Shown here piece by piece: positions 9,875-62,324 of a stretch of 64,000 bases of DNA (its first letter is position 1; the number at the start of each line of letters is the position of its first letter). The notes below the pieces were generated by a model. The model searched no databases, was not told the origin of the DNA, and saw only the letters and a list, made by a program, of their open reading frames with translations. The stretch comes from Mytilus edulis (Eukaryota), in assembly GCF_963676685.1 (NCBI RefSeq), contig NC_092353.1:69812001-69876000 (forward strand), in the 5' to 3' direction. The translations under genes were made by a program, and so were the position numbers.

Positions 9875-11984
9875 ATGGAATCAGATGGACAGCCACTACA
9901 GTTTAACCCTTCTGAGGATGAGAACGAATCACTTCGTGTACCACAGAAATGGAATTTTCGCCGTACCAGAAATATTTCATCGTCTGAACTCGATGACTTC
10001 GATGACAGCGATACAGATATACCAGTCCATTCTTACGCCCAAGACATCATACAAATTCATACCAAGGTTTTAGCATCTGGCTTAAAAGCATTCTTGATAG
10101 ACAACACATTGACTGATGTTGTTATAAACGTTCAGGAAAAAACTTTTAATTGTCACAAAATAATTCTTGCAGCTTTTTCTACCTTTTTTTAAGTCGATGT
10201 TTACTTCTGGAATGGTAGAAAGTGATCAAAATGCAACTGTACGTTTACCAAACATTGAACCAGATATAATGAGAAAAATTATACAATTTATGTATGTGGG
10301 AGAAGACTTTGATTCAGAATTTGCAGATGAGATGCTACTGACTGCCGATTATCTTCAAATAGAATGTATAAAGACCGTGTGTTTAAAGCAAATAAAGCAC
10401 AAACTCAACGGCAATAATATTTTCAAATACTGGCGTTTGTCAGAAGAAAATGTATCATACAAAGATTTGAGAGGTTCCTGTAAAAAATTGGTTGCAAAGA
10501 ATTTCAAATTGTTGTATTCAACAAATGGTTTTGTAGAAATTTCCTGTAATCAAATTGTTGCACTGCTTCAAGAGGAAAACCTTAATGTTCCTGATGAAAA
10601 TATAGTATGCGATGCTGTAGACCGATGGATTAAACATGATATTGTCGAAAGGAAGCGACATTTGGTATCAATATTTGAATACGTCCGATTGCCATTAGCG
10701 TCGGAGCAAAATCTCACGAAATTCAAAACAGAGTTCCCATACTCAAAGGACTCTAAGCTTGATGAATTCTTGAAAGAAGCTAAATGCTTTCATGAAAAAT
10801 ATGACAGACAGTCGTTGTTAGTCGGCCAAAGTAAACGCACAACTTACAGACTGAGGGCAAGACAAGAACATGTATTAATTGTACTTGCAGGAGGAGAAGA
10901 CGATAGTAACGAGCGTTCTAGAGCAATGTGGAGCTATTGGTCAAGCATAAAGAAATGGAAGCTGTTATCAGATCTCCCAGAAGAAGTGCAGACTGAAAAT
11001 CACGGACCAGCATCTTGTAGTTATTGTTTATCAAATATTCTATACGCAGGAGGATATGAAAATGATTGTTTCTACAGATATGATGGAAAACATGATAAAT
11101 GGATAAAATTACCACATTTAAATCATGACAGAGCAGGGCACAGTATGATAGTTATAAAGAATTGTGTATATGTATTTGGCGGAATGGCTTACGATTATTC
11201 GCCTTCAGCAGACTTTCTGGCGCGAAAAAGTTTCAAAACAATTGATGCTTTTAACATGACAAATCAATACACCGGACAAGATCCGGAAAAATCGATGTTT
11301 GAAAACTACAAAACATCCGATCATTTTGATGAAAAATTGAACAGAAATGACGATACGTCCACCACCGGAAGTGAAAACGAATCTACTATTGACGACAATG
11401 ATGATACTGAAAGCTCAGATGGTGATACTAGCGGAGGCAATTGGACTAGATATGGTAAACTTTTACATCCTATAGTGGATGGGCAAGTTGTGGTAGCTGA
11501 TGAGAAGATTTACATCTTTGGTGGAGTGACCGTAGGCGAGTATGATACCGACACATGTGTGCAATGCTATGATACCTACCTCAAGACCTGCTATATATTT
11601 AAACATAATGACCTCGGAATTCAGTTAACAGAATCAAAGGTGTTTGGTTGTGACGATAACATTTGCATTCTTAATAAAAATTTAAAGAGTTTTTCAATTA
11701 TACCGTATTTCAAAAGAGTTGGAAGTGTTTCTCGCAATGAAGAGAAGATACAGTTCGTAGATCAGTGTTTCACTAAGTTTCCGCCAGAGGGATTTCTTAA
11801 GAGTGGCAATATCTATTACTTCATTGGGGGGATGGATCGACGTATATCAAATACAGTAGTGAGTTACAACTTAAAAACAAAACAGACGTTAATTTTTGAA
11901 GATGATGCTTCCTTACCTAGCAGCTTAACTGATTTCTCATGCTTAACTCTTGTTCTTGAAAAAGAAATTTACTGGCGTAATTGA
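9875..11984 (+). CDS. Intronless Kelch-like protein (BTB-BACK-Kelch, Cullin3-adaptor type), ~702 aa if one extra T at 10184-10190 is removed
   Basis: Two overlapping ORFs join into the BTB motif 'LTDVVINVQEKTFNCHKIILAAFSTF/FKSMFTSGMVES'. BACK motif 'LNVPDENIVCDAVDRWIKHD...VRLPL' and Kelch GG...Y...W repeats follow. The frames differ by +1 at ACC-T7-AAG. ATG 9875 is the inferred start. Confidence 0.88.
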
Positions 11985-20749: not shown

Positions 20750-21685
20750 ATGGATGCTTTTGACATTTGGACTGTTTTAATTTGTTTTATTTGTCTAATT
20801 CTAAATATTATTTCAGTTGCCGATTTAGTGAGTTCAAAAAAATTAAATATGTCAAAGTTCAAGACACTTGTATTATGTTAAAGCATCAGTGATATAATAG
20901 TGGTGTTAGAAGGTCTGTCTTTTGTTATTATAAGATACACTGATAACGGAAAAGACACCGTTGAATATGTATGTGCCGCACTGAAACACTTCATGGCTGG
21001 CACGTTTATTTTCTCATTGTACCAGTGCTTTATGATCTGTTTAGATCGTCTAAATGCAACATTTGCCACTAATAAACGCACTTTACGTATACTTACGTCA
21101 CGTAGAGGAATATTCACTGGCTTTGTTCTGATACAAGTTGTAACGGCTTTGCATCTTGTTGATGATATTACGCGAGGACACAAACCGTGCACAACTCCGT
21201 CGATCTCGGTTCCTAGCTTTGTCCTTGTTTTTGATTTACCTGTTTTACTTTTGTGTGTAGTGATCGTCGGAGTTTACGTAGTGATAATTTTTCGTATAGT
21301 TAGACAACAATCAATAAATGAGACTCTAGGGTTAGGGAACGTCAGATCAGCTGATGCAATGAAGAAAAGTACAATTACACTTGGAATTATCATTGCTGTA
21401 TCACTGGTAGGAATTATGCCGAGAGTATTGCTTGCTGTTGTTTCGATGTTTACTGGAGAAACGTTCACAGACTTTTGGAGGACCCTAACTAATGTTTTAT
21501 TACTATTAAATCCATTATTGGATCCGATAATTTATGTCTTTTGTGTGAAGGAATTTGGAGACCATCTTAAATTAATTTGGTCAAAAATCAAAAACTCAAT
21601 CCAGCCTGTGAGTACTGTTGAAATTAGTGAGCATTCTTTAAATTCAATAGAAAGGTGTGACCATGAGGTACTTGAATCTATATAA
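20750..21685 (+). pseudogene. Rhodopsin-class (class A) GPCR paralogue with premature stop
   Basis: 936 bp, colinear with 34073-35008. Codon 44 is TAA (20879-20881) where the paralogue has TTA (Leu). LSISD, CLDRL and DPIIY motif regions are otherwise retained. Confidence 0.88.
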
Positions 21686-34072: not shown

Positions 34073-35008
34073 ATGGATTCTATTGCCATTGGGACCGTTT
34101 TAATTTGTTTTATTTGTCTAATTCTAAATATTATTTCAGTTGCCGTTTTAGTGAGTTCAAAGAAATTAAAGATGTCAAAGTTCAAGACACTTGTATTATG
34201 TTTAAGTATCAGTGATATAATACTGGTGTTAGAAGTTCTATCTTTTGTTATCATAAGATACACTGATAACGGAAAAGACACCGTTGAATATTCCTGTGCC
34301 GCACTGAAACACGTCATGGCTGGCACGTTTATTTTCTCATTGTACCAGTGCTTTATGATCTGTTTAGAACGTCTGAATGCAACATTTGCCACTTATAAAC
34401 GCACTTTACATGTTCTTACGTCACGTAAAGGAGTATGCACTGGCTACGTTCTGATTCAAGTAGTAACGGCATTGCATCTTGTTGACGATATTACGCGAGG
34501 ACACAAACCGTGCACAACTCCGTCAATCTCTGTTCCTAGCTTTGTCCTTTTTTTCGATTTACCTATTTTACTTTTGTGCGTAGTAATTGTTGGAGTTTAT
34601 GTAGTGATAATTTTTCGTATAATCAGGCAACAATCAATGAATCAGAATATCAGGTTAGGGAACACCAGATCAGCTGATGCAATGAAGAAAAGTACAATAA
34701 CACTTGGAATTATCATTGCTGTATCACTGGTAGGAATTATGCCGAGAGTATTGCTTGCTTTTGTTTCGATATTTACTGGAGAAACATTCACAGGCTTTTG
34801 GAGGACCCTATGTAATGTCTTATTACTATTAAATCCATTATTGGATCCGATAATTTATGTCTTTTGTGTAAAGGAATTTAGAGACCATCTTAAATTAATT
34901 TGGTCAAAAATCAAAACCTCCATCCAGCCTGTGAGTACTGTTGAAATTATTCAGCATTCTTTAAATTCAATAGAAAGGTGTGACCATGGGGTACTTGAAT
35001 CTATATAG
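34073..35008 (+). CDS. Single-exon rhodopsin-class (class A) orphan GPCR, 311 aa
   Basis: Seven hydrophobic segments. TM1 Asn (ILNII), TM2 LSISD, TM3 Cys and ERL (DRY-like), TM6 Pro (IMPR), TM7 NPLLDPIIY, helix 8 KEFR. Confidence 0.92.
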   Translation: MDSIAIGTVLICFICLILNIISVAVLVSSKKLKMSKFKTLVLCLSISDIILVLEVLSFVIIRYTDNGKDTVEYSCAALKHVMAGTFIFSLYQCFMICLERLNATFATYKRTLHVLTSRKGVCTGYVLIQVVTALHLVDDITRGHKPCTTPSISVPSFVLFFDLPILLLCVVIVGVYVVIIFRIIRQQSMNQNIRLGNTRSADAMKKSTITLGIIIAVSLVGIMPRVLLAFVSIFTGETFTGFWRTLCNVLLLLNPLLDPIIYVFCVKEFRDHLKLIWSKIKTSIQPVSTVEIIQHSLNSIERCDHGVLESI

Positions 35009-37930: not shown

Positions 37931-40900
37931 AGGAGTTCATTTTATTAACATTCGTTAATTAAATATACACGTCAATTTTCTTTTATTTGCAAACCAAACC
38001 ATTGGGTTCTAAAGAGGAAATATCACTAAATATACGACAATAATTTATCAAATTTTTAACAGCCAAATGTTGAATCTGTGTGGAACGACTGGCATTACAG
38101 ACAAGTCGAAAAATAGCGTCTATTCAAACAAGATATAGTGTATTCTCGTTTGTTGTGGAGATGTTTAAGTACCCAGCTATATCTGGTATGTGTTATTGCT
38201 AAGAAGTTATTTCGCGTTGTATCGATGTGATGTATTAAGCCCTCTTCACATAGTTTTTATAGCTTATTCTTGTGTTGTATTGTTAAACTACTATCAGGTT
38301 AGAAGATTGTTTGCGCCTTCAAACTAATATACCCCAACCACTTTCTGTATGTACCTGCCCTAAGTCAGTGGTTTCCATTTGTTATCATTTGTTTTAGCTC
38401 ATTATTTTGAACATCAATTAGGTCATTAGCTTTCTCGTTTAATTAATTTGTTTTAGATTGTTCATGGTGTGGCCTTTTACAGCTGACTTTGTGGTATGGT
38501 TCATTGTTGAACTCAATACGGTGACCTTTATCTGATAATATCTATGTAATTTTGTCTTTTGTGGAGAGTTGTCTCATTGCAATCATACTGATTATACTCA
38601 TTTTTATATATTAAATGCAAAAGTATGGCAATATCACCACCGAAATTAAAATATATTCATCGTATTATCAAACACTAGAACATCTTATACAAACAAAACT
38701 GCTACATTTTGGAGAAAAAAATGACGGAAAGGCATTGCAGAAGCTATACAAAACGCAGAATAATTTTAATCTCCACATCTAAAAACATTTTCAACAAACA
38801 CAATTGTTGAGATATACGCTAATTCCATTTGCAATTAAACGATGTTGATACCATTTAGCTGTAACAAGATGTTAAATTTGAAAAAAACAAGAAATGAAAT
38901 CTTATTATTTTATTTTGCATCAAGAAACTGTTACAATATTTTGTATCGTGCATCATTTTTATCTATGAAGAGAGAACACATACAAATATAACAGACATGT
39001 TGGTAAAAGTTGAAATATAAAGTTACAAAGGTACATCATTGGACTGAGAATATTATTCTACCAACTTATCTCCTGTTCTGTGAAGTGTTTTACTTTCCTG
39101 TGTTCTACCATTCCAAACTCCGAAACAGTGGTGACGTTGCTTCGCTAAATTATCAACGTAGCGTAGAAAAGAAGACATAACCGCTGTTTCGGAGTTTCCT
39201 TCAATATACACATTCTTGTACATGCGCAGTCATTTCCTGCGAGATCGATGAATGTAACCCAAGAACAGCACACACATTGATAGACCATCGGTGAAGTTAC
39301 GTGTCGATTTCCGCAATCCGTTAGTATCCACTTTCCATTTCGTCTTTCTTGTCTGAAAAATATTCTCGAAAATATCTTCTCAAATGTTCAATATTACTTT
39401 ATCTTTAAACATGTTAAAGGTATGCGTAGTAAAAAGTAAAATCACAAAAATACTGAACTCTGCGGAAAATTCATAACGGTAAGTCCCTTATCAAATGACA
39501 AAATCAAAAGCTCAAACACATCAAACGAATGGAAAACAACTATCATATTCCTTACTTGGTACAGTCATTTCTGATGTAGAAAATGGTTGTTTGAACCTGG
39601 TTTTATAGCTAGCTAAACCTCTCACTTGTAAACGTCACTCAAAATTAACTGTCAGAAATGAATAATTTTTTGGCATTTTGATTTCATTATTGATCCACAA
39701 CTGTCGTTTCAGTTATGCAGACAATCTCTTTAACGTCTTTGAAAGAAGTATAACAAGCTATTTTGTTACCAAAAGGAGGATTTAAAGAAAGGTTAATGAC
39801 TTACCTATTCATTGTTAAAAAAATCGTATAGTTACTTGAAATTGTCTAGTGTTGTATATATAAACAATTGAGTTGTCCTGTTTAAATCACATATGGTAAA
39901 ATCTGTTTAACTTTATTCTCATGACATTATATATCTTAGTAAATCAGTTTTTACCCAAATGTCAAAGTACTTTCAGTTGCACACATATATCGTTCTTTTC
40001 AATATTCTGCTTTCGGTTTCAATAAAACTGGCATAGTTAATGAATTAGCTGCATACATAGCCTAATTTGATTTTATCACATATAGCTTTGTTTTACCTGC
40101 AGAACTTGTTATATTTAATAGTTCTGCATCATGTGGTATCTTCTATCCAAATATCCGGGATATTTGAAATCCTGATAAAACTCTTTTAAAACCTCTCCAA
40201 AGAAGTCATCATCAATATCTTCATCTAAATTAGCATAATACATTTCCTTGATTACTTCTGCATTTACACTATCTATGATATTATCTCCTTTGTTCTGGAA
40301 AAGGAATATTTTTATAATTATTAGCACACACACACACACATACACACACACACCAAGACAAAAAGACCCTACAGAAAGATACAGATAATTTGTAGATGTA
40401 TTGTTATAAGAAAACAAAAATAAAAGACATTGAAATGTCAAATATGTAATACAAGCATGGCCGTTTGATTTTACCAATTATGTAGCTATTAATACGTAAT
40501 AAACCAGTTTTATTTCAGAATTTGGAAAGCCAATTCCGTTTTTCAAAACAATGCTTTTTTAGTGTTATTATTACATGTAAACATATGTAGACCATTATCG
40601 TTAATCGGAGATCATTTTACATTTTTTAAACTAAAAATATCAGGTTTTATTGCTGCAGCAGATATTCAATTGTTATGGGCGATTCTAATTTATCTTGTAC
40701 AAAATGAAAATAATACTCTATACATTTTGTGCGTCAGAATTCGTTTTCTGGATTGACCCTTTATGATCAGGAATGCCTATTTGTTTAATTTAGGTCTGGA
40801 GCTGGCATGTCAGTAACTGCTAGAAGTCTGTTGTTATTTATGTATTTATGTATTATTGTCATTTTGTTTATTTTCTTTTGATTCATATTCTGACATTGGA

Positions 40901-42397
40901 CTCGGACTTCTCTTATGCTGAGTTTTACTATGCGTATTGTTGTGCATTTGTTTTTTTTTTCTACATTGGCTAGAGGTATAGGGGAGTGTTGAGATCTCAT
41001 AAACATGCTTAACCCTGCCGCAATTTTGCGCCTGTCCAAGTCAGGAGCGTATGGCCTTCTTTTGGTCTTGTAGGATTTTTAATTGTAGTTTCTTGTGTAT
41101 AATCTCTGACTGAATAATTTACCATCATAACACTCTGCATATAGTCTTTTTTATTAGAATAATGCTATCCGTAGTTGCCTACATTACAATTACCGATACA
41201 TGTATAATTCGGAGTTTAGTATGACGTCCATTATCACTGAACAAGTATACATATTTGTGTAGGGTCAGATAAAGGACGCCTTCAGATCAGGGAGTTTCTC
41301 GCTGCGTTGAGGACCCACTGATGGCCTTCCGCTGTTGTCTGCTCTGTGGTAGGGGTTGTTGTCGATTTGACACATTCCCCATTTCCATTCTCAATCTTAT
41401 CGAAAACAAAACTATCAAAGCCGGAGATCAATAAATTATTTAGCACATACTTACAACTTCTCGTCCAATCAAATTGCTTGAATTTGCCTTCTGATTTTCA
41501 TAGTACATACCTTTTCCGTGTACTAAGTAACTACGCATGAATGACCACAAGGGTAAGATTTCATTGTATTGTAATCAAGATATTAGAACAAAAATTGCTA
41601 CTGGCTATTTTGAAATAAATGATGTGTTCCAAATTTAACTAAATAGTTTGTAATTAGTTTTCAAACAGATTTTGAACATCCTACTACTAAATTTTGTTTT
41701 GACAATTAAAAAAATTTCTTTCATTTAAATAAAGAGTAATAATAATGGTGCTTTATACCTTGATTAAAGTACAACTCAATATAAAATGTGTAATCCTTTA
41801 TCTTCCATGCAATTACTTTGTACACAAAAAGAGTCAACCATGAATCTTTTGAAGGGAAATTATTAATAAAGCAATTTGATATATTTAGTCATAAATTGGT
41901 CGATAATTGGTTGCCTTATGTCCAGTGACAAATATTTCATGCATATAAACTATCCACTAGACTACCTATAGGTACATACCAGGGGCAGATCCAGCCATTT
42001 TTTAAAAGGTGTTTCAACCAAAGATGTGGGAGGGGGGTCCAACTGTTTGTGATAGTTTTAGGTTTTATGTGAAATAAAAAAAATGTTTTCAAGAATGTAA
42101 AGCTTTCACTGCAATTTAAGAATTGTCTGCTCTTGGTCAATTCATTTGTCATCTTACCATGTAAATAAGTACATGTATAGTAAAACAACGCTTCGTTCAT
42201 ATCAATAAACATACTTACACCAGCAGCTACCTTCTTTACATTCTAAAGTCAAGGGCCTTTTGAAATCCCATTTTTACAATGATATTATAGTGAGTAAATT
42301 TACAAAACTACGTAAATGAGCTACATCCAGTCAGCCAAAACATATCAATAGACTAATTACAGGATTACTCAAGTTGTAAATATGTGCTAAATTGGAT

Positions 42398-42486
42398 ATT
42401 GTATAGAAAGGTATATACTATGAAAATAAGAGCTTGGGGCAAAGCCCCTCGCTCTAATTTTCATAGTATATACCTTTCTATACAAT
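42398..42486. repeat. ~88-bp near-perfect palindrome (mini-MITE)
   Basis: ttgtatagaaaggtatatactatgaaaa...GGGGCAAAGCCCC...ttttcatagtatatacctttctatacaa. Confidence 0.85.
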
Positions 42487-42829
42487 AACCGAGACTTGTT
42501 CAGCTATATAATCAGAAGAGATCCCTAATTGGAAAATGTCAAAAATACACATAATCACCTTTGCTCTATGGAGTTTTTAATACAGCACAAAAACGTTCAG
42601 TGATTATAATTTACAAGTGTGTTTCATAAGAGAATATGGCGCACTTCAATTAGCTTATTGTTCTTTGATAGATTGAATACCTGTTCACGTTCTTTTGTAC
42701 ACAAAACAAAGAATGCTTTTGATTCGTTGAAAAATATAGTACCACAAGCAACATTGGTTCTTTTCATTTGAAAATAAAAATCATTTTTCATATTGAACAG
42801 GAAAAAGGGTGGTTGAAGATGTACTTAAA

Positions 42830-42952
42830 TGAACCACCAACTCAACGCCTGAGTCTGGATGGCCTCTTTTACAAGACATACCTATTGTCTCGTTCTAAAC
42901 ATGCATGAAATATTAACCACTGGACGTTAAGCAACCAATAATCAATCAATCA
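42830..42952 (+). mobile_element. SINE-like 3' end with (CAAT)n tail
   Basis: ccactggacgttaagcaaccaataatcaatcaatc. Confidence 0.5.
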
Positions 42953-45900
42953 TATGCAGTATAACACCATTTAAAAAAGTAAACAATGATGATTTGATGA
43001 GAAAGGGTAACATGTTCTAGTATCTCGTCCGAACTGCAATCTAAAACTAAAATGATTGAATTATAATCATTTAAATTCCTTAAAGATAGTTATCGAATTG
43101 GGCAAAGATATGGTGACCTCAAATAAAACTGATGTCATTAACATTTGAAGCTGCGACTACCTAGTAAAACTAACATTTTAAACAATTGTACATAAAACAG
43201 CAATTAAAGCGCTGTTCCTTTGCCTATTTTTGCCATGCATGTTCTGATTTTTGTCACGGAGGGAAACCCCATAGCACTTCATGTCTATAATATATTCCAT
43301 ACCCAGCTGTGAATAAAGCCTTAGTTATTTGTACAGCATCATCTAGTGTTTTTTCTGTCTATGGGAGACATTTCATCTGCTTACCCTTTAACGAAATAGT
43401 ACTATTTCAATGAATAATGATCTTTGGATAATGATGGGCAGTTCATTAATTAATGATTATTTTTTTGGTTGTTTAATGTTCTTAATATTTGTCTAGGCAT
43501 ATAATAAACATTCAGGATATACTTCAATAAAATATGAATGCATATAGCATACGGTAATGTCGGAGTATTCTGTCATTTGTTATCACAAAAAAGTTGGATC
43601 TAATAAGTACTTGAAATAAGTAAATTTGCTGGAGTACTGTAACGCGTTTTTTTTTCTCGGATTATTCATTTCATTCGAGAAAGTGATTTGCATGGTTTTT
43701 ACAAATAGTATAAAACTTTTATTATAAATACACAATTTGTTTTCGTTTGTTCTAATATTTAGGAGAAACGTTTGACAGTAAGGACATTCTGATACAGTGG
43801 ATTTTTCAAAACATTGGATATATTGATTTTCTTAAGAAGCATAATATGTAGCCTTTAATATTCGGAATTCATTTCTCTTAAAAAAAAATATTCTTAATTT
43901 CTTTTTTTCACCCATTATTGCAAAAAAACTTTTTCAGTTATAAACATTTCCATCAATAAGATTTTTAAATTGGACCAGTGATCTATATTTTTATCTGATT
44001 TGTTTAGCTAGATACGCACTGCCTTGTGACAAGGAATGAATATCATATTGTCTTTTAAAGAGTTCCAATAATCACTTAACGGAAAATACATGCGCTTTAT
44101 AATTTCGGACAAAAACAAATAATTATCAATAAAAATCGAAATAATGTGATTCAATTTCAGTATTGAATTCGATCAAAGATATTTAACAGATAATATTAAG
44201 TAACTTCATGAATACAAACAAATTGAACTAGAATGTCACCACATTTATTGGTGAAATGCAGCAACGTTTTGATATCAAAGCATTATTAATTCTAGGACAC
44301 GTTGTCAGAATTTACATACCTGATAGAAATCTTGAATTTGATACGATTCCATAACATCATTGTGTGAAGGTGTGTGAATTTTTACTGTATTCTTTTCTAG
44401 ATTTGTTTCTATGTTTTCCAAAAATATCTGGCTTTTCCTTCAATAATATGATAGCCAAATTTCTAAAAAAAAAAGAACATTTTATAACTTGATCTTCGAA
44501 ACTTGTGTATTCGATTCACCATGAACCAAAAAACACCATTAACCAAAACAATATTAAAAAGATACCTAAACATACGAAAAAAACAATCAAGCTCATTGAA
44601 TTGTAAATAACCGGTAGTAGAAAAGAAAGCGAAGCCAGATAAATCAAAGTTACATCATTAGAGTGACTTATTTATATATTCATATTTTAAGATCATAGTG
44701 AAATTTAAAACATGGAAACTATGCCGAAATTACAGATAAAAATAAATGATTATGCGTTATTCTATTTGTTTCTTTGGCATTATTTATACTTTTATTGAAC
44801 AAAATCACATTTCAGCTAAATTCGTGAAATAAAACTTAAAACAAAGCACAGTTTCAACTTAATTAAGATCAACACTCAACTACTATACTAAATCATCTGC
44901 ATCTAATATAGCTAAGACTTGTAACTATTGAGGAATGGGGTTTAGTCAAAGATGCAAAATCTTTTTTCATGATTTAATACCAATGTTTATTTGGATTTTG
45001 CACTCAACCTTTATCCGTTATAACACATATGTCAAAAAAGAAAGGTAAATAGGGGTTGTTGTGTCTGCTTGTAAGTCTATCGACACATTGTATTCCCAGC
45101 TATTCTTCAAAGGGTGAGTATTTGACAATACCTTTATAGGAATCAGAAGTCACTTATATCGATAATGATCTCTAACTCTTTATTTTTATCGGAATACGTA
45201 TCTTTATTAAGTTCTATCATTTTTTTATCTCAGAATACAAGGACGTATTGAATATTTTCCATTGTATTGATAAGTTCGCCACGTACGGTACATGCAGTGT
45301 TCATATTAAGCTCATATAATACATGGCTGGAAGTATAGGAGAGGGTTGAGATCTCGCTTAACATGTTTTCCCGAAACAATTTTGCGCCTGACCCAAATAA
45401 AGATCCTTGAGCCTTTGATAGTCTTGTATGATCTTTAATTATAGTTACTTTATATGTTTTGGAGTAAAGAATGACATTTATTGCACTGGTCTACACACTT
45501 TTGTTTAGGGGCAAAATAAAGTCAGCCTGCGGGTGCGGGATTTTCCCGCTGCGTTGAAGACCCTTTGGTGGCCTTCGACCTCTTTATGCTCGGTGGTCGT
45601 TTTGTTCTCTATTTGACACATTCCTCATTTCAATTCTCAATTTTATTTGAATTAAAGATTAAAGGGGTTCACTCGAGGTTAAAACTTATGAACGGATTGC
45701 AAATAACGGAAAACCGTCTTATTATGTTTAAGAATAAAATTAAGGCTTGTGTCTATGCGGTTAGAGGGTTGACGTGTTTTGCAGTAAGCCATTGTACACA
45801 GACGACACTACTACCATGTATATGTCAGGTATATTATTTTTTGATGCTGTGACAAAAAGATACTTACCATATCCATTACAGCCGTGAAAATATTAAGAAA

Positions 45901-46109
45901 TAGAGCAATTATTAGACTCATCAGTAAGCATCCCATTGTTGACATCTGTGAAAACAATTATTGAACGTTACTCATATCTTAAATTTATAATGTTCACAGA
46001 AAAACGCAAAGAGTTCAATTTTTTTGATATTATAGAATTAGATTATAGGACGGGGAATGGTGTGTGTGTGTGTGTGTGTGTGTGAACAGTATTGGGAATA
46101 GGGATTGGT

Positions 46110-51519: not shown

Positions 51520-52300
51520 AATGTTTTTCCTTAAATCAAATAAAGGATGTACTTAGATGAAATGATGAAAATCAAGAATTTGAAGTTGAAACTATCAGCT
51601 TGAAAAGCGTTAATTAAAGATATAAATAAACTTAAATATTGATAGGTAATCGAGCTCCTTGTCGAGATATTATTTGAATTATAAAATATGGTGAGAAAAA
51701 GCTGACACGGACTTTTATCTTATATTTGCAATGACTGTGTTATTTGGGTCTCAAATCAACAGAAAGAAAATGGGGAATTTTGGTAAAGGCATTTTATGAG
51801 CTAGTATATATTATATGAAAAGATAAAGGGTGTTGTGGGGCAAAACATATAACCTTGTATTTTAGGAGAAAATAAGGCCAGCCCCTAAACTACTGCATGC
51901 TCGTGATTCTTTGTCTGGCTTGGGAATGCATTTCGTCCTCGTACTAAAATGTCAGCTATCCGTTAGTGCTTTAAGATTTTGCATTTAAATTTTTTTGGGG
52001 CCTCGATCATCATTGTAAAGACATTGATTATCAAAATGCTCATTTACTACAATAAAATTGTACCCTTAATGTCATTAATCCCTTTGTTAAAAAGCCCCGT
52101 TTTAAATGATGAATTACTGAATGAAAATAATCTTTATCACTTAATGATTTTCTGCTATTAGGACGTAAAATTTTTGAAAAATTAATCAAAAGAGAACTCG
52201 TTTTGGTTACTTAAAATAAATTAATGCGATGTGGGTAACTCAATAAGTTAATCCAATTTGTAATTTTTGTTTGATTACAGAGATCAACTTCACCAAAACA

Positions 52301-55300
52301 ATGGGCAAAATAACGATCATTTTGATAAATGCTTTACTCCTGTCTGTTGTTACGGCTTACATGAACATGGTAGGTTTCTTTTTTTGTCAAATATTATGCA
52401 TATATTCGATTGAACATACTTGTACTGTTGCGTTTTCGTGTCTTCTGTGTTGACTTGAGTTTATAATGATAAATTAACTGTTAACAAACTTTTATGTTTT
52501 TTAATACTTAGGCTTTTCTACCTCAGGAATAGATTACCTTAGATGTATTTGGCAAAACTTTTAGGAATTTTTGGTCCTCAATGCTCTTCAACTTCGTACT
52601 GTTTTTGACTTTTAACATTTTTTTATTCGAGCATCACTGATAGTCTTTTGTAGACGTAACGCACGTCTGGCGAGAATATAAAATGTCATTCCTGGTATCT
52701 ATGATGACTTTATTAGACTCTTCTCTACGATTCTGATGTCATATCAATGAAATACTACAATCTATATATGTATATATATTCAACTTTGTTCCTCTATTGT
52801 CAAGTCCGATGTTTGGTTAGAAGTGACAAAAAAGACAACAAAACATTCCCGCTAAATCTCATTAGCACGTGTTATTGAATACATGCGCATGTAAGTTGTA
52901 CGCGTACTAATAGTATTTAAAAGTACTGTTAGTACAATAATTTCCCACTATAATATCGGACAGTGTGAAATTATATTCATACAAAGTGTGTAAAGAAAAG
53001 GTCTAATATATGTTATTATTTTACCACATGACGGCGGAGTCATTTTTAGTTTACTACTCTTGAAATAACTGATTTAGATAATTTTACGTAATTTTCACTA
53101 ACTACTATCAACAACACAAATAAAAAATTCTGTATTCCACTCCGATAAAAAAACAAAACAAAAAATGTAATGACAGGTGCACAGTGGTATATCGTTTGAG
53201 GTTTTCTGTAAGAGATTAATTAAAATCCAATAAATTACCTAGAAAGGATTACAGATAAAAGATATATCTTCTAATATGTCGGATATCATTTTTTCTACAA
53301 CATAACTTAACAAATCATTCATATATTAAATGAAATAGGAATCTATTAGAGTAGTAAATCGGAGGTGATCCACTTTTATCTTATTGAAAAACTTAATGGC
53401 TATCCGGTTTTTAGACATTGAACATACCTAACTTTGAAATAGAAGTCAAAGGGAATTGATAAAATATTTAAGTTACCGGTCCTTTGGCTATCATGCAAAA
53501 CAAATACAAATTCGTAGACAAATTTTCGAAAACATTTACGACTTACTGACCTTCCGCCTAGCAAAGAATTAAAAGCATGACAAAAATTTAACGTATGTAT
53601 TTTAATATTTATTTGCGATTTAATGAAACTAATTTTATTTCAATAAAAAGTGAAATAATTTTTGTTTTAAAAATATAAATAAAGGCAACAGTAGTATACC
53701 GCTGTTCGGAACTCATAAATCGATAGAAAATAACAAATCCGGGTTATAAACTAAAACTGAGGGAAACGCATTAAATATAAGAGGAGAACAACGACACAAC
53801 ATTAAAATGTAACACACACGGAAACGAACGAAGCATTAGACAAAATCCGATGAGAATAACAAAATACATGAATTTTGGAAAGAAACGTACCGTGACACGT
53901 CTTATAGTGATGTGAATTCACTCTCAAATATAAGAAGAAACATACGACACAACTGAAACACAACGTTAAATGTAACACACACAGAAACGAACTATAATAT
54001 AACAATGGCCATATTCCTGACTTGGTACAAGACATTTTTAAGGAAAAAAATGTTAGGTTTGAACCTGGTTTTGTGGAATGCCAAACCTCCGGCTGTAATG
54101 GCAATGTTAAATATAACATTAAAATGACAACATAACATTACAGGACAACAATACAAATAAATAGGAGAACATATTGGACAAAGAAACACACGAATAGTAG
54201 TTAACAAAAGGCACCAAGAGATTGTAAGAGATAGGATCGTAATGCATTTGTGTATCTTTTCTTAGCATTTGGAATTATTTGATATCTCAAATCTATATCA
54301 AATATGTTGGGTTTTTTTTTTTTGTAAATTAAAGGGAAATTCCTGACAAAAAATTAGTTGTAGTAGTTTTTTTTTTTTTTTATTGATTATAATTTTACTT
54401 AATTAAGTGCTAAATCAAAATGTGCTACTCAACTAATATTTTTTTTCTCTATGATATACCCTTTTGGTCTCGTCAACTTGACTTGTTTTATGTTTCATTA
54501 CATAGTCTTACGTATAAGTTATGTTTATAAATAAAATAATATTTTTATATCTTTTTTAATTGGTAGAGCTTCCTACGTGTTTCTCGTTTCTCGTTTTTAT
54601 ATAGATTAGTCCGTTGGTCTTCCCGTTTGAATGGTTTTATATTACTAATTTCTTGGGGTCGTGTATAGCTTGATGTTCGATGTGAGACAAGGCTCCTTGT
54701 AGAAGGCCGTTCCTAGACCTATAATGGTTTACCTTTATAAATTGTTATTTGTGTGGGGAGTTGTCTCATTGGCACTCTTACCACATCTTCCTATATCTAT
54801 CTACTGATTATTTTTATTTTAGAAATTTGGTTATAAAATAATTGAAGGGAAAGCAAGATATTTTGAAAACATTGAGACGAATCTGGAAAAGAATATAGTG
54901 AAAATTCACACTCCACCACATAACAATGTTATGGAGTCGTACCAAATTCAAGACTTTCTACAGGTTTGTAACGAAATGTTTCTCACAACTCTTGCATAAT
55001 TACACTTATACGTATCAGGTAATTCTGACGCAGGAGTTTTGCTACATGTATTCGGTGTAATGATTAGATAATCATTTATCCAAACCATTGTCAAAATTCT
55101 TTTAACAACATCTTTGTAGAATTCCATTGTTAGATATTTCATGTATTCTTCATAAAAATAGTGCAAAAATGTGGAGTGGACAATTTAGAATCATAGGTCG
55201 AGGGATTGATGTCTGTTTAAAGTCTGGTTTCAAATTAAAAGTGTAATCAGGACGAGATGATGATATTGAGATATGAATATGAACCTGGTTTACACAACTC

Positions 55301-58300
55301 GGAGAACACAAGGTTTGTTACAAGTCGACATGATGAAATGTAACCCTAACTTAATTCTGACTACACGCCAAGCCAAGTAGTCTTTACGCCTCATGCCTAG
55401 CGGAAAAGCAGCAAATATCAATATTACAGTTTATAAAATTGAGAAAGGAAATGGTGAATATGTCAAAGCGACAACCACCCGACCATAGAGCAAACAACAG
55501 TTTGACCTGTGGGTGTTCGAAAACACGCCCTCTCGCACTCGACGAAGAAGATATGCAAGCAAAACACCACTGCGCAGGTTACACGAAGTAGATGAAACAC
55601 TGGAAATATCACAACTGTAAAGATATATCACAACTTCAAAGACAAAGCGAACAAGGGTCAACAAAGCACGCATAGAAATCTATTTTTTACATAATAAAAT
55701 GCCTGCACGAAGGCAGAAATATCACAGTTGGTATCCAATCGTTTGATGTGTTTGAGATTTGAATTTTGCCATTCGCTGACGGACTTTCAGTTAACATTTT
55801 TTCCCGGAGATTCCCTTTTTCCTATTAGTTTTTTTAACAACACAAACCCATCAAAACCGAGTATGGTTCCCATAGAACACGTCTTACTCTCGACGGAGTA
55901 CTTACTCAAATACTAAGTGGTTCTTTTGAAATGGAAGTTTTTCGTTTCAGGGTAAGCAGCTGAAATGTCTTCCTTCCATAAATCAGTGTAGACTGAGAGA
56001 TATAGATATGAAAAATGCAGCAGATGCTGGCCAGACTACAGAGGCGTTTATTCAAAGCTGGGTACTATAAAATATGAAGATATATAATCATAACTTGTAT
56101 TATATTTATTAATTACATTGAGCAGGCAGTATAAAACCGTAGATGTTAACTTTTTCAATAGTGTGACATGTCTCTCATGTCCCTTATATGCATATTACAT
56201 CAAAAGATATCTTCCAAGAAATGAATTGTATTGTTTTAAGTCGTCGGTAACATTACTTGAATTCCATCAACCCGATATAGTAAATTATAGTAATAATATG
56301 TAAAGAATATTACCATAAAAGTAAAATACCTGGACGTAAAAGATGTCTGCATGTTGATTGATATTTACGAATAACGTTTTTGTATCGATGATAAATTAAG
56401 TAAATGTTTTGACTAGTTTGTGATATCGAAAACCCTTGTGTAATCATTTTTCAGTAATACAGAGAACTATTTCGTTCAAACCAAATACCTTGTTACATAC
56501 ACGAGCTAACCGAACACATACATTATTAAATTATAGTCATACTCCATATTAAAAAAAATGAAAATAGCGATGTTTTTATTATAACTAACTACTAGTATAA
56601 CAATATATATACCATTTGTGAGTGCGTTTTAAAATGTGTTGAAGAATATATTTTTTATCACCCCTAAATAGAACAAAGGTGATAATACCATCACTAATGA
56701 AAACTCTGAAGTTGTCACAGAATTGTACTATGCAAATTTTGATCAAGTTCTTGATGACAGTTCCCTCAGCGAATCGTTGAAAGAGTTTTATCAGGAGTTC
56801 AAATATCCTCTGTACACAGAAAGGAAGGTACCACATGATGCAGAAGTATATAATATGACACATGTTACAGGTGAATACTAAAATTAAACTTTTACGAAAA
56901 ATCAAATGTTACACTGCGCGTATGAACAGTGGGTTAAAAACTTCTGAGAATATCACTAACCTTTATTAGTGTTTATGGCTAGTTTGATATTTACAAATAG
57001 GCTTCAAATGATAGATCACTAGAATGACCATATCATTGTATATTTTAATGCACTTTGGATGAAAATCGAAATGAAAATAGAAAATGACTTGAAAATATAT
57101 TTCAATGGTAAAAACAGAGATCAGATATTATACAAAATTATCTATTTGTTAAATTGGTGTTTCAGAAAACATTTAATATAATTATTTGACTACTGCATGA
57201 ATGTGTTTTTATCTGTTTTTATGCCCTATTTATGAGCATTATGTTTTCCGGTCAGTGCTTCCGTTAGTCTGTCCGTCCGTTCATTCGTCCGTGCGTCCGT
57301 TCGTCCGTACGTCTGTCCCGCTTCAGGTTAAAGTGTTTGGTCAAAATAGTTTTAATGAAGTTGCAGTCCAATCAACTTAAAACTTCGTACACAATGTGCC
57401 CTATGATGTGATCTGTCTAATTTTATGACAAATTAGAGTTTTTTACCCCATTTTCACGGTCCACTGAACATAGAAAATGAAAGTGCAGATGAGACATCCG
57501 TGTACTAGGTACTCATTCTTGTTTAAATCTAATATCATATATTGAAGCCTTATGTAAATATAGCTGTTTTACAAACCACGCCTCTTTTGGGGAGATATTT
57601 AATATTCAGCGAATTATTGTTTGTTAACATAGCTGATTCCCAGATATGATCTCTTTTCTCATCTCATAAAGACATGGTTTGGGAATGTTACCAGTATTGG
57701 TTCACACTCATAGCGGTGACATTGAATTCTGCGGACCACTTTAAGTGAAAGGGGGAAAAGGGGTAGGGGGTAGAATAACATTGAGCTCTTAGAAACTCGT
57801 CCATTTTGAAGTGTTGATAATATGCTGCAAGCCCTATGGTTTCACCTTTGAATTAAGTAGTAGTCAATATCAAACCTTCCTTCTACAATATAATTTTTAC
57901 AAAACTTCATAGTAAAATTAGCACAGTTTTATCCGTAAAGAAAGTTCCAAATGGAAAATTGAATTAGTTATATATTACAGTATTGCAACCTACAAGATAA
58001 TCAGCGAATCTGTACTGACAGTTATCTCATTTTAACGAGGATTCAAATTCATTACCTGGATACATCTCTTGCAAATTAGTGGAAAATTATTGTTATATAA
58101 GATTTCACGTTGATTTGGATATAATATGTGCATTTATTTATATGTTTAAAACACATTGTACAATTATCGTCTGTAATAGGTATCTATATGGTGTAAAAAA
58201 AAAAGCCCAAATCAAGATAGAAAATTATTTAAACTGACTTTTATTACTTTTGCAGGTGGTCGTGTTAAAAGGAGACTTACTACTTTAAGTTTGGACTGCA

Positions 58301-60266
58301 ATGGCAAAGATACGAAAGTTCTTTATGGTATTAATTCATCATCTTCTTGCACACGTCTTAAATTGTGTAAAAAGTAAGTTACACATGACAATACTTTGGC
58401 AATTATCACATTTGTACTTTAGCCGTATTTGGCACAACTTTTTGGAATTTTGGATCTTCAATGCCTTACAACCTTGTACACGTTTGGCTTTATAAATATT
58501 TTGACATGAGCGTCACTAATGAGTCTAATGTAGACGAAACGCGCGTCTGGCGTACTAAATTATAATCCTGGTACCTTTAATAACTATTTTAGTCCTTATA
58601 TGTTGACTTATTATTGGAGACGTTTTCGAATTATCTTTAACACTTTGAACATCTAGTATGAAACACCATTTGACATTATTAAATTCAACATATTTTAGAC
58701 CCGAATACCACAAAAACTTATAATTGCATTGACGTTGCGCACGGTATTGGTGTCTCTTTGGAAAAAATGTGATAGATAGCTGGTTATTCCGATTCAAGCT
58801 CTTTTCCTTTACAATAAATATCCATGTTATGCATATCATTCGAAAGGAATAAACAACAGAAATCAATAATATAGATTAATTTGTGCTTTGTATATCTTGT
58901 AATGAAAAACTTTGCTCATTTCGATGCCTATAACGTCATTTAAAGGGTGTCCCGCTGTTACAATTTTGTCTTGTGCGTGTCTTTGAAATCACAATGCGAA
59001 TTAAATAGTTAATGGAACGCTATATAATTTTACAAGTGTATTAAATACCTGTAACATAAAATGGTGTTAAAGACTTTCTTTGGAACAACGTCAAAATCAT
59101 TGTTTTATTTGGAACGTCGTGTAACGCTGAGTGGCCCTGATATCGTGCATAACGTCATTACATTCTAACACTAAATTAATTTTTGTTAGTACTTATAGAA
59201 ATATTACACTTTCTGTTTTCTGTTAAAAGATTTAAAACCTCAGCACATACTCATGATACTTGTTGTTTTCTTTTGTTGTTTTTCGTTTGGTATTTACTTG
59301 ACTTAAGGATTATGTACCCTTGTGTTGATTCAATGCTAAACATATGGAAATTTTATAGAAAATCCACAGACTTTGTCCTTGTACTCTCATATTTGACAAT
59401 TTGGTGACTGATAGATATAGGATTATTGCATGCAATGCAAGCAATGATTTCCTTAAAACAAGTTTTTTAATGTAGTTATTGGTTAAAACAAATGTAAAAA
59501 TAGACCAAATAGAGTACACCTTTTAGGGTGCACTCGACTTCAGTGACTCAGCACGAGGAGTTTTGGAATTTACAGGTTGCTTAGAACTTTTTGTAAAAAT
59601 TAAAACGCAAGCACATCATAGAAAAGCAAGTGAGTAATCTATGTTTCAAATTTTATAACAAAAATCTCTTTATTAAAGGCTGTTGATTTTCTATAAAAAA
59701 ATCTCGTGGCTTATTTGCCACAAGGTACTCTTTTTCTATTAAATGCAATAAAACAGTAAATGATAATGCTTTGCATCAAGTTTCCCCTTGGAATGTGTAC
59801 AAAATGGCCTATCTCTTTTATTCATTATATCTGTAGTTTTGATACTATTGAAGTTTGAAAAGTTCGTACAAAAATGGCTACAGAAGGGGTCATAAACCCT
59901 AAATTTATAAAGATTGAATTACTATCCCGTGTGTCTATTTCAACTTGTTCTGAAAACTTAGTACTAATTACGAACCTCCGAATTTCTTAACAAAACATTC
60001 TCTAGGAATCAGAAATTATGTGTTTAACGGTAGATTTGTTCATTGTTCTCGTGAAATTCTACGATAATTTTTGACCGCTGAGCTCACTGTTACCATGTTT
60101 TATGATATCATTTGAGAAGTGAAACATTTGTTATTTCAGAGTAGGAGTATATTTGGTGAATTGTGGCAATAGACATTTAACTGCACCAGGGGTTTATCAA
60201 TGCGTATGTTGTAGTTGGGTAACTAACATCAATTCGAAATACTGTCGTTGTGCTGAGATAGTGTAA
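52301..60266 (+). CDS. Secreted precursor: signal peptide + BRICHOS-like prodomain + furin site + Cys-rich cationic peptide (254 aa, 6 coding exons)
   Basis: Exons 52301-52369, 54823-54963, 55951-56061, 56672-56870, 58256-58373, 60140-60266, all GT-AG and phase-compatible (0,0,0,1,2). Translation: MGKITIILINALLLSVVTAYMNM-KFGYKIIEGKARYFENIETNLEKNIVKIHTPPHNNVMESYQIQDFLQ-GKQLKCLPSINQCRLRDIDMKNAADAGQTTEAFIQSW-NKGDNTITNENSEVVTELYYANFDQVLDDSSLSESLKEFYQEFKYPLYTERKVPHDAEVYNMTHVTG-GRVKRRLTTLSLDCNGKDTKVLYGINSSSSCTRLKLCKK-VGVYLVNCGNRHLTAPGVYQCVCCSWVTNINSKYCRCAEIV*. Five exons have homologues with matching boundaries in the minus-strand paralogue. The BRICHOS assignment is by eye. Confidence 0.88.
52443..52714 (+). 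mobile_element. Retrozyme family 1 fragment in the intron after coding exon 1 of the BRICHOS-like gene
   Basis: Unit homology. Core mutated (ctgatag..., gtaa instead of gaaa). Confidence 0.8.
53678..54217 (+). repeat. Interspersed repeat 'ataaaggcaacagtagtataccgctgttcg...'
   Basis: The same terminus occurs at ~22983 and ~35134. Confidence 0.7.
55350..55430 (-). mobile_element. Fragment resembling the Meta/RUDI SINE conserved domain
   Basis: Minus strand gatatttgctgcttttccgctaggcatg...aaagact..ttggct resembles the Meta-SINE core as I recall it. Confidence 0.5.
57215..57524 (+). mobile_element. HINE/pearl-like element, same family as 62775-63246, in an intron
   Basis: TTTTTATGCCC...GAGCAT, (GTCC/GTTC)n, one core repeat, same 3' end (catccgtgtact...cattcttgttt). 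Confidence 0.78.
58415..58590 (+). mobile_element. Retrozyme family 1 fragment in the last intron of the BRICHOS-like gene
   Basis: Hammerhead at ~58511-58552 with a single core change (CTAATGA). Confidence 0.82.
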
Positions 60267-60996
60267 AGTGATAGATTAATAAAGGAACGAATTGTGGATC
60301 ACCTGAAATAACAGGAAAAAAAGCAAAATATTTTTAATCTGAATAAAATACCTATGCAACTTATGTTTTTTTTCTTTCTGATCATTCATTAACATAGATA
60401 TTTTGTAACAACTTTAATCTCCTAGTCTACGAAAATGAAATTCAATATAAAAATAAAATAGCGGTATCTTATATAGGAATTCATGGCGGTATCCTATATT
60501 TGAATCTATAGCGGTATCTAATACAGAAATGTAGTTGACTTCAATTATATATATGTCAATGTAAGCAATTGTAGGTAACCATACGTCATTAAACAATGAC
60601 AAAACCCCAAGCCATATAGTTGGCTTTAAAAAAAATTGACATAAAAAACCTAGTTTACTGTTACAACCCCCCCCCCCCCCCCCTTTATGGTATAACAGTA
60701 CAGCATAAGAACAACCTATATACTTAAGTTGAAAAGAGCGTATCTAATTTGATCGGACAAAAAAACAGACCAGAAATGGCAGCATAAATATACATCTTGT
60801 GATGAAAATAAACTGATCTGATGAGGTCTAATGAAGATGCTTTTATTGTGCTGCTAGTGGTACCCGTTTATGATTTCAATATAAAAAAAAAGGATCAGGC
60901 GTAGAAGATATTGTGTATAGTCACATGATTTATGTGTCTATTGGTAGATAGCATACATAAAAATTCATATTAATCGAAGACTCTTATAGATCGTTT

Positions 60997-61142: not shown

Positions 61143-62324
61143 GAAGTTTATGTTAGATGAATGCGGATCCCAATAGATCAAGGAATTGTTGCATGTACAG
61201 TCGGTATTGCCAATGTTATTTCAACTGATCGGGCGGAGCTAACATTAACGTTTTAATTTGCATAAGGACAGTCTATTTGAAGATGTCCGGTTTCATAAGA
61301 ATAATGACCGTTATAATTATAATTGATTTCTAATTACTATCAGTGTCACCAAACGTATATACAAATGAACTGGGTGAATGATATGGGACGAATAACTGGA
61401 CTCTTCATTCATGAGTTTATCCTTTCGACCATACCGAAACACTTGTATATAGATTGAGCGGTCTTAAATAAGCGAACCGGTTAAACCCCGCCCAGTCAAG
61501 TGAAATAAATCAAGTAATACCTGGCCAAAAGTATTCGTCACCTGCATTTTTTTGCTATATATTTCATATAAAAACACACTTTTTCAAAATAATATTTTGA
61601 ATGCATTTATTGTTGGATTTTTACCAAAAAGGCTTTAAAAGACGTAGAATTGTCTATAGCATGTTTTTTTTTTAATTTGGTCATAGTTTTGTCGTCAGGT
61701 GTTTTTGTTTTCTCTCGATGTGAACTTGAACACATACATTAAAATTTCAAGTAGTCTCATATTTGATTGAATATATATGGCGAATTTCTGAATAGAAAAT
61801 TATATTTGTGTTTATTTTGTGAAAATTATCCACAATAAAAATCGAACCAAATAAACAATTAAACATAGGCGGATCCAGGGGGGTCTTGCTAAACGGCGGA
61901 AACGGAAACGCAACGGAAAACGCAACGGAATACGGAACGGAAACAGAAAGAATCAACATCTTTTCTTTTTGGTTATTTTATCTACATAGGCATGTTTTAT
62001 ATAGTATTACTTATGTTAACAAGAAAAACAAACCAAACCAAACAACACAAAAAAATCTTAATATAGGCCTACAAAAGATTCACATCGGCCTCGATTCTAT
62101 AAATAGAATGTGAAGTAATAAACTTTTGTGGAAATCCTTTGCATCATTTTTTTTTAATTGCCTTGAATCAAGATTAGTGTTGTAATGTATCTTGTTGCTT
62201 TTTTCTGCATTGGTGAGTTTCGTTGTATCTTTTCTTGTATAATGGAAAGAAAACGTAAAAGAGACCTAATAGGACAATGGTGTATTGACAAAATCCGATA
62301 TGGAAAACCAGGTTACTAGACTAT

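What the first reader, a model, noticed from the sequence alone, without database searches (positions are those of the whole stretch)
52301..60266. Hidden six-exon gene: BRICHOS-like prodomain + furin site + cationic 9-Cys peptide, a candidate undescribed bivalve defence/effector peptide family
Seen: six phase-compatible exons give an uninterrupted 254-aa precursor with a ~19-aa hydrophobic signal peptide, a ~155-aa prodomain (net charge about -7 by hand count), RVKRR, and a 74-aa peptide (net about +6; 9 Cys ending in CxCC...CxC). The ORF track misses the spliced protein. Known: signal + BRICHOS + basic site + Cys-rich peptide is the architecture of polychaete antimicrobial precursors (arenicin, alvinellacin, nicomicin, capitellacin). 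An anionic propiece with a cationic mature peptide is typical of AMP precursors. The Cys array does not match mytilin, myticin, defensin or big defensin as I know them. Inference: the prodomain is a divergent BRICHOS ('HxPxHNxV...QDF..G...K......C' and 'L...L.EF....PLY') chaperoning a new class of secreted peptide.
Basis: partly seen in the sequence, partly recalled or inferred. Interest (0 to 1): 0.85.

Follow-up and report, generated by a model that had tools for sequence, protein, structure and literature searches.

The report
Mussel BRICHOS-like precursor of Cys-rich peptide
This is a real, intact six-exon blue-mussel gene, already in RefSeq as an "uncharacterized protein", that encodes a secreted BRICHOS-like precursor with a furin-type cleavage site and a fast-evolving 9-cysteine peptide; a defence role is plausible but untested.

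Summary
**Observation: confirmed.** The six GT-AG exons (52301-60266, +) translate to 254 aa. They match RefSeq XP_071136799.1 (Mytilus edulis, "uncharacterized protein") letter for letter. The gene is therefore unnamed, not hidden.

**Family.**
- About 12 loci in this genome share the same exon phases.
- One of them is a decayed copy inside the window (39223-45936, minus strand).
- Full-length relatives turn up only in five Mytilus species; prodomain-only relatives occur in an oyster and a pearl oyster.

**BRICHOS reading: probable, not proven.**
- Against: the gene's own protein has no Pfam hit, and the helix-2 cysteine is missing.

**Cargo.** R-x-K-R is kept in 15 of 17 full-length members and the 8-9 Cys scaffold is conserved. 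The cargo evolves much faster than the prodomain.

**AMP reading: weakened.** Cargo net charge across the family runs from -6 to +7, and this copy is the cationic extreme.

The scan noted a similar precursor on another piece of this genome (s1-834687).

The parts
52301..52369 (+). Exon 1: start codon, signal peptide (about residues 1-19; likely cut after V-T-A) and the first 4 pro-residues. Donor GT at 52370.
   Evidence: The E1 donor is conserved in the paralogues. The cleavage position is inferred from the -3/-1 rule; no predictor was run.
54823..54963 (+). Exon 2 (47 codons, phase 0): predicted N-terminal strands of the prodomain and the most conserved block, H-T-P-x-H-N-x-V-x-E-S-Y-x-I-Q-D-F, with the invariant Asp67-Phe68.
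   Evidence: (H56, N57, E61, D67 and F68 are invariant in 25 sequences)
55951..56061 (+). Exon 3 (37 codons): two predicted strands carrying the only two prodomain cysteines (C76, C83), followed by helix 1.
56672..56870 (+). Exon 4 (66 codons + 1 nt): a strand, short helix 2 (L-K-E-F-Y-Q-E-F, no Cys) and the last strand (Y-P-L-Y), then a linker with a conserved N-x-T sequon (N168).
58256..58373 (+). Exon 5: the proprotein-convertase site R-V-K-R-R (residues 176-180, nt 58261-58275) and the first half of the cargo peptide (C188, C205, C211).
   Evidence: R-x-K-R kept in 15 of 17 full-length relatives
60140..60266 (+). Exon 6: the second half of the cargo with the conserved core C-G-N-x-H-x-T-x-P-x-x-Y-x-C-x-C-C-x-W-V-T...C-x-C (C221, C234, C236, C237, C248, C250). 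Stop codon at 60264-60266.
60278..60347 (+). Two AATAAA hexamers (60278-60283 and 60342-60347) just after the stop. These are candidate poly(A) signals and are unverified.
   Evidence: read from the sequence only
39223..45936 (-). Decayed paralogue, head-to-head with the gene. E1, E2 (frameshift), E3 (in-frame stop), E4 (frameshift) and E6 are recognisable; no E5 was found.

Best explanation
The locus is an intact gene of Mytilus edulis. It belongs to a Mytilus-expanded multigene family of secreted pre-pro-proteins built on the BRICHOS plan. The likely mechanism has four steps. (1) A 19-residue signal peptide sends the chain into the ER (inferred). (2) A 156-residue acidic prodomain with a divergent, gastrokine/OAF-like BRICHOS fold holds the beta-prone, cysteine-rich C-terminal part while it folds and forms disulphides. 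That is the role BRICHOS domains play in other precursors; it is inferred here, not shown. (3) A furin-type convertase cuts after R-V-K-R (inferred from conservation of the site). (4) A 74-75-residue peptide is released with an 8-Cys core (four disulphides) plus a ninth, dispensable Cys. The cargo diversifies quickly among gene copies while its scaffold is kept. That pattern fits a molecule acting at the interface with microbes or other outside partners. This copy carries the family's most cationic cargo (+6/+7), so it is the family's best candidate for direct antimicrobial action. That last step is a hypothesis.
Confidence: 0.7

Rival explanations
1. One reading: an antimicrobial-peptide precursor of the arenicin/nicomicin type. 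The released cationic peptide would kill microbes by membrane attack and the anionic BRICHOS propiece would neutralise it until cleavage.
For: The architecture matches annelid BRICHOS-AMP precursors (PMC6265681 abstract; PMC11767717). Those include a larger four-disulphide peptide, AmBRI-44a. This copy has a -7 propiece and a +6 cargo. The cargo evolves fast, the family is multigene, and it includes a pseudogene, as in other mussel defence-peptide families (own knowledge).
Against: The charge argument fails at family level: 6 of 17 cargos are neutral or anionic and the median is about +1. At 74-93 aa the cargo is far longer than described BRICHOS AMPs (17-44 aa). It also has a strongly conserved core motif, which suggests a specific partner rather than bulk membrane action. 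There are no activity, tissue or induction data.
Confidence: 0.3
2. A non-immune secreted ligand or mucosal factor of the OAF, gastrokine or chondromodulin type. The BRICHOS prodomain would deliver a stable disulphide-knotted polypeptide that signals to the animal's own cells or protects an epithelium.
For: OAF has the same plan: signal peptide, BRICHOS, furin-like site and a 70-residue cargo with four disulphides (PMC9714404). The nearest feature-space clusters are gastrokines and OAF. The cargo core motif is conserved and its charge is variable.
Against: The OAF cargo is highly conserved from fly to human (PMC9714404). This cargo is genus-restricted and evolves fast. There is no hit to OAF_N or OAF_C, and a separate true OAF gene lies on another contig. 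Lineage-specific tandem expansion with pseudogenes is more typical of defence or effector genes (own knowledge).
Confidence: 0.3
3. The prodomain is not BRICHOS but a LolA/ependymin-like half-barrel that binds a hydrophobic ligand. The protein would act as a two-domain carrier, and the dibasic site might not be used.
Against: These scores are within the stated background for models with no true match. No ependymin Pfam hit appears, whereas BRICHOS is the recurrent sequence-level hit and dominates the feature-space neighbours. R-x-K-R is conserved exactly at the domain border.
Confidence: 0.1

Closest known systems
BRICHOS superfamily, gastrokine-like branch (Pfam PF04089)
   Same: Signal peptide. 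A roughly 150-residue domain with an extended antiparallel sheet and two helices. An invariant Asp followed by an aromatic residue at the end of a strand. A C-terminal cargo behind a convertase site. The nearest feature-space clusters are gastrokine-2 (PMC9714404).
   Different: Below the Pfam threshold, or no hit at all, for most members. Helix 2 has no Cys, so the hallmark disulphide is replaced by a probable C76-C83 link between neighbouring strands. No similarity outside the domain.
OAF (Out at first; PF14941/PF22873), recognised as BRICHOS in PMC9714404
   Same: Almost the same plan: secreted, BRICHOS, furin-like site, then a cargo of about 70 residues rich in beta-strands with four disulphides.
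   Different: No hit to OAF_N or OAF_C. The genome has its own OAF gene on contig C5. OAF is single-copy and deeply conserved, whereas this family is multi-copy, found only in Mytilus with its cargo, and its cargo evolves fast.
Annelid BRICHOS-related antimicrobial precursors (arenicin, alvinellacin, nicomicin, capitellacin, AmBRI-44a)
   Same: Prepro-architecture with an acidic BRICHOS proregion and a C-terminal Cys-containing peptide released at a basic site. The families are multigenic (PMC6265681, PMC5431198, PMC11767717).
   Different: Those peptides have 17-44 residues, are consistently cationic and have proven activity. Here the cargo has 74-93 residues and 8-9 Cys, its charge is variable and no activity is known. 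Reviews state that BRICHOS-AMPs are known only from polychaetes (PMC9756803).
Chondromodulin-1 / tenomodulin
   Same: BRICHOS followed by a furin site and a Cys-rich C-terminal domain with eight cysteines (own knowledge; family listed in PMC9714404).
   Different: Those are type II membrane proteins of vertebrates. No sequence similarity of the cargo was detected.

Membership tests
BRICHOS superfamily | N-terminal hydrophobic signal peptide or signal anchor | tested here: met
   Residues 1-19 are hydrophobic, GRAVY 1.95. They are conserved in the family. No dedicated predictor was available.
BRICHOS superfamily | Sequence match to the BRICHOS profile (PF04089) above the curated cut-off | tested here: not met
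   P0028 has no hit at E<=10. 4 of 25 relatives hit below threshold (best 19.9 bits, E 8.9e-4, against a cut-off of 25).
BRICHOS superfamily | [quoted passage not shown] | tested here: met
   Asp67-Phe68 is invariant in 25 of 25 sequences. It lies at the end of strand E62-67, the fourth strand, which equals beta-2 after the two extra N-terminal strands (definition from PMC9714404).
BRICHOS superfamily | [quoted passage not shown] | tested here: not met
   Helix 2 (residues 141-150) holds no Cys. The only prodomain cysteines are C76 and C83, on adjacent strands.
BRICHOS superfamily | Fold: central antiparallel sheet, two helices, last strand after the short helix | tested here: inconclusive
BRICHOS superfamily | Proprotein-convertase site followed by a beta-rich, disulphide-linked mature polypeptide | tested here: met
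   R-V-K-R at 176-179, and R-x-K-R in 15 of 17 full-length relatives. The cargo has 8-9 Cys and four predicted strands at pLDDT about 73-84. Actual cleavage was not tested.
Annelid-type BRICHOS antimicrobial peptides | Consistently cationic mature peptide | tested here: not met
   This copy is +6/+7, but the family ranges from -6 to +7.
Annelid-type BRICHOS antimicrobial peptides | Demonstrated antimicrobial activity of the released peptide | not testable with these tools
   Needs a peptide and assays.
OAF | Match to OAF_N (PF14941) or OAF_C (PF22873) | tested here: not met
   No hit in any of 25 members at E<=10. The true OAF exons lie on contig C5.
Known mussel AMP families (mytilin, myticin, defensin, big defensin) | Sequence match to the family profile | tested here: not met
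   No Pfam family was matched by the cargo exons or by the whole protein. The Atlas gave no usable hit for residues 180-254.

The most novel reading that the evidence does not exclude
The family would be the first BRICHOS-delivered host-defence peptide system outside annelids. It would be a Mytilus-restricted, tandemly expanded set of genes. The conserved BRICHOS chaperone would export a new 8-9-Cys peptide fold, and the rapid diversification of that peptide (charge -6 to +7) would reflect an arms race with microbes or parasites.
Probability: 0.3. Interest if true: 0.75.

Novelty: new variant of a known kind. Interest (0 to 1): 0.55.

Why it matters
Reviews in the searched library describe BRICHOS-linked antimicrobial peptides as confined to polychaete worms. 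Mussels are known for many defence-peptide families, none of which uses BRICHOS. This family couples a divergent BRICHOS domain that lacks the hallmark disulphide to a new cysteine-rich cargo. That widens the known range of what BRICHOS chaperones carry. It also gives a natural series of about 12 paralogues with charges from -6 to +7 for testing how the chaperone and its client co-evolve. If the cationic copies are antimicrobial, it adds a new peptide scaffold from a farmed species. If they are not, it is one more lineage-specific secreted protein family of unknown role.

Tried and rejected
- **RNA evidence:** No runs were available, so read laying was not used and the junctions are unconfirmed by reads.
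- **Exon-by-exon Pfam:** nothing.
- **Family profiles against PDB sequences:** nothing at E<=10.
- **Foldseek on both models:** nothing significant.
- **Atlas search with the cargo:** no usable hit.
- **Bridging search from the oyster relative P0025:** found only itself.
- **Six-frame search of the genome with PF04089:** three weak exon-sized hits elsewhere, of no use as a comparison set.
- **Complex prediction, prodomain against cargo:** no verdict (score 0.12, mark 0.34). This is neither for nor against binding.
- **Rfam over 38-64 kb:** no family at gathering score.
- The joined model was used only through database protein P0028, which a search returned.
- **Rejected readings:** chance ORFs (refuted by paralogue conservation and dN/dS); OAF membership; ependymin or LolA membership (background-level scores only).
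Full report
**What is in the sequence**

Reading 52001-60600 and translating the six proposed pieces gives open frames flanked by AG and GT:

| Exon | Window coordinates |
|---|---|
| E1 | 52301-52369 |
| E2 | 54823-54963 |
| E3 | 55951-56061 |
| E4 | 56672-56870 |
| E5 | 58256-58373 |
| E6 | 60140-60266 |

- The pieces sum to 765 nt, i.e. 254 codons and a stop.
- The mechanical ORF list shows only fragments.
- A profile of exon 4 and its paralogues was searched against 1.84 billion representatives. Together with a follow-up search, it returned database protein P0028.
- All six exon translations are found in P0028 in order, with only the two split codons between them.
- P0028 is RefSeq XP_071136799.1, "uncharacterized protein [Mytilus edulis]".
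The gene is unnamed, not hidden.
- The M. galloprovincialis orthologue XP_076078938.1 is 99% identical, with an identical C-terminal peptide.

- Residues 1-19 are hydrophobic.
- Residues 20-175 have net charge -7 and two Cys.
- R-V-K-R-R lies at 176-180.
- The last 74 residues have net charge +6 and nine Cys, at positions 188, 205, 211, 221, 234, 236, 237, 248 and 250.

**It is a real gene in a family**

- Six-frame searches of the window's own genome with exon 4 and exon 6 find about 12 linked loci.
  - One cluster lies on the same contig about 3 Mb away.
  - A second cluster lies on contig C2.
  - A further copy lies inside the window on the minus strand.
- After fetching the loci, all six exons were found in the same order in about 10 paralogues.
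- AG/GT sits at the same phase for E1 to E5 in those paralogues.
- Per-exon Nei-Gojobori counts give the prodomain dN/dS of 0.06-0.37 (median 0.19). That is clear purifying selection on coding sequence.
- The in-window copy (39223-45936, minus) has frameshifts in E2 and E4, a stop in E3 and no E5. It is a pseudogene.
- Database relatives with the full architecture come only from M. edulis, M. galloprovincialis, M. coruscus, M. californianus and M. trossulus.
- Prodomain-only relatives come from Saccostrea cucullata and Pinctada imbricata.
- Three relatives are complete ORFs on Logan contigs of about 1.0-1.4 kb. The genes span 6-8 kb or more, so these contigs are most likely mRNA. They show the same exon joins in relatives.

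**Is the prodomain BRICHOS?**

Evidence at sequence level:
- The gene's own protein has no Pfam hit at E<=10.
- PF04089 is the family hit by the most relatives: 4 of 25, best E 8.9e-4, 19.9 bits against a cut-off of 25.
- UniRef labels homologue P0041 "BRICHOS domain-containing protein".

Evidence from the language-model feature search on residues 20-175:
- It lists gastrokine-2, a proSP-C-like cluster and OAF clusters at 0.89-0.84.
- All ten best named hits fall in one family or clan.
- By the tool's own calibration these are leads, not proof.

Evidence from structure prediction:
- Two AlphaFold2 models were made, one of the whole protein and one of a prodomain-only relative. Mean pLDDT was 71-72, with the core at 84-93.
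- Both give the same order of elements: six antiparallel strands, a long helix, a strand, a short helix, a strand.
- This fits the BRICHOS core as defined in PMC9714404: strands 1', 2', 1-4, 4' and 5, a short second helix and a variably placed first helix.
- Asp67 is invariant in 25 of 25 sequences and is followed by Phe. It ends the fourth strand, the position of the conserved BRICHOS Asp.

Evidence from structure searches, which is not decisive:
- Foldseek finds nothing significant.

One defining feature fails:
- Helix 2 has no cysteine, so the helix-2 to strand-4 disulphide cannot exist.
- The two prodomain cysteines (C76, C83) lie on neighbouring strands and probably bond to each other.

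I read the prodomain as a divergent BRICHOS domain with odds of about 0.8.

**The cargo**

- R-x-K-R is kept in 15 of 17 full-length relatives, and a conserved N-x-T sequon lies just before it.
- The cargo has 74-93 residues.
- Its core is eight Cys with a well-conserved motif, C-G-N-x-H-I-T-S-P-x-V-Y-x-C-x-C-C-x-W-V-T.
- The ninth Cys (C205) is absent from five relatives. It is therefore dispensable and may be free or used for dimerisation (inference).
- No Pfam family, no Atlas cluster and no protein outside Mytilus matches the cargo.
- Its fold was not tested alone, because the piece has no reference of its own.

The cargo evolves much faster than the prodomain:

| Comparison | Cargo N:S | Prodomain N:S | Fisher p |
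|---|---|---|---|
| This gene vs closest paralogue | 50:16 | 31:35 | 0.0012 |
| One pair on contig C2 | 36:14 | 11:28 | 5e-5 |
| Recent duplicate pair P5-P4 | 15:2 | 4:4 | 0.059 |
| Recent duplicate pair P12-P10 | 13:1 | 1:2 | 0.063 |
| Recent duplicate pair P11-P10 | 11:2 | 1:4 | 0.022 |

The three youngest duplicate pairs give pairwise omega of 1.5-3.7 on about 70 codons. These are small samples and amount to a hint of positive selection, not a test.

**What it most likely does**

- The plan (signal peptide, BRICHOS, convertase site, beta-rich disulphide cargo) is that of BRICHOS pre-pro-proteins in general.
- OAF is the nearest architectural twin, with a 70-residue cargo and four disulphides (PMC9714404).
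- The annelid antimicrobial precursors are the nearest functional analogy (PMC6265681, PMC11767717).
- The steps of secretion, intramolecular chaperoning and cleavage are inferred from that family knowledge and from site conservation.
- The complex prediction of prodomain with cargo gave no verdict. It counts neither way.

For the final function the evidence points two ways:
- Towards a defence or effector role: genus-restricted tandem expansion, a pseudogene and a fast-evolving cargo.
- Against a shared cationic membrane-active mechanism: cargo net charge runs from -6 to +7 across the family, with a median of about +1.

The window's gene is the cationic extreme and so is the best copy to test for antimicrobial action.

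**Known or new**

- Papers in the library that mention BRICHOS together with Mytilus or other molluscs describe no such family.
- A 2022 review states that BRICHOS-AMPs are found only in polychaetes (PMC9756803).
- A 2014 mussel transcriptome lists an unnamed "BRICHOS domain-containing protein" among transcripts raised after toxic-alga feeding (PMC4203926). Whether it belongs to this family is unknown.
- The scan itself noted a similar precursor on another piece of this genome (s1-834687). That agrees with the paralogue clusters I found.

I class the finding as a new variant of a known kind. It is a BRICHOS-type precursor with an unusual prodomain disulphide pattern and a new cargo, in a phylum where none has been characterised.

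Noticed in passing
window 39223-45936 (-): A decayed paralogue of the same family lies head-to-head with the gene. E1 is at 45868-45936. E2 (44320-44462) has a frameshift, E3 (43303-43385) has an in-frame stop and E4 (40107-40294) has a frameshift. No E5 was found. E6 is at 39223-39324, and the splice sites are still recognisable.
   Followed up: yes
window 52530-52690 and 58420-58560 (introns 1 and 5): The two introns carry copies of the same short repeat, which ends in a hammerhead-like C-U-G-A-U-G-A...G-A-A-A-C stretch. This resembles the retrozyme elements that first-stage notes report elsewhere in the window. Rfam found no family at gathering score in 38000-64000.
   Followed up: partly
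window 10167-11984 (+): A 605-aa open frame with BTB, BACK and Kelch repeats (Pfam E 9e-20 for BACK). It looks like an intronless or single-exon KLHL-type gene.
   Followed up: partly
window 20900-21685 (+) and 34073-35008 (+): Two open frames with rhodopsin-family 7TM receptor matches (Pfam 7tm_1, E 8e-10 and 1e-13).
   Followed up: partly
window 61341-61445 (+); also L031:6-83: A short stretch downstream of the gene weakly resembles exon 1 (M-G-R-I-T-G...). It recurs inside an intron of a paralogue. It is probably part of a repeat or an exon-1 relic.
   Followed up: no
G000:C5:84576948-84583991 (-) (L037-L039): The genome's true OAF gene: three exons match Pfam OAF_N above its cut-off. It is separate from the family studied here.
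   Followed up: partly
window 52271-52300 (+): The frame stays open upstream of the ATG and an AG lies at 52278-52279. The M. coruscus homologue P0029 is annotated with an N-terminal extension through the equivalent stretch. A non-coding 5' exon or an alternative start is possible.
   Followed up: no
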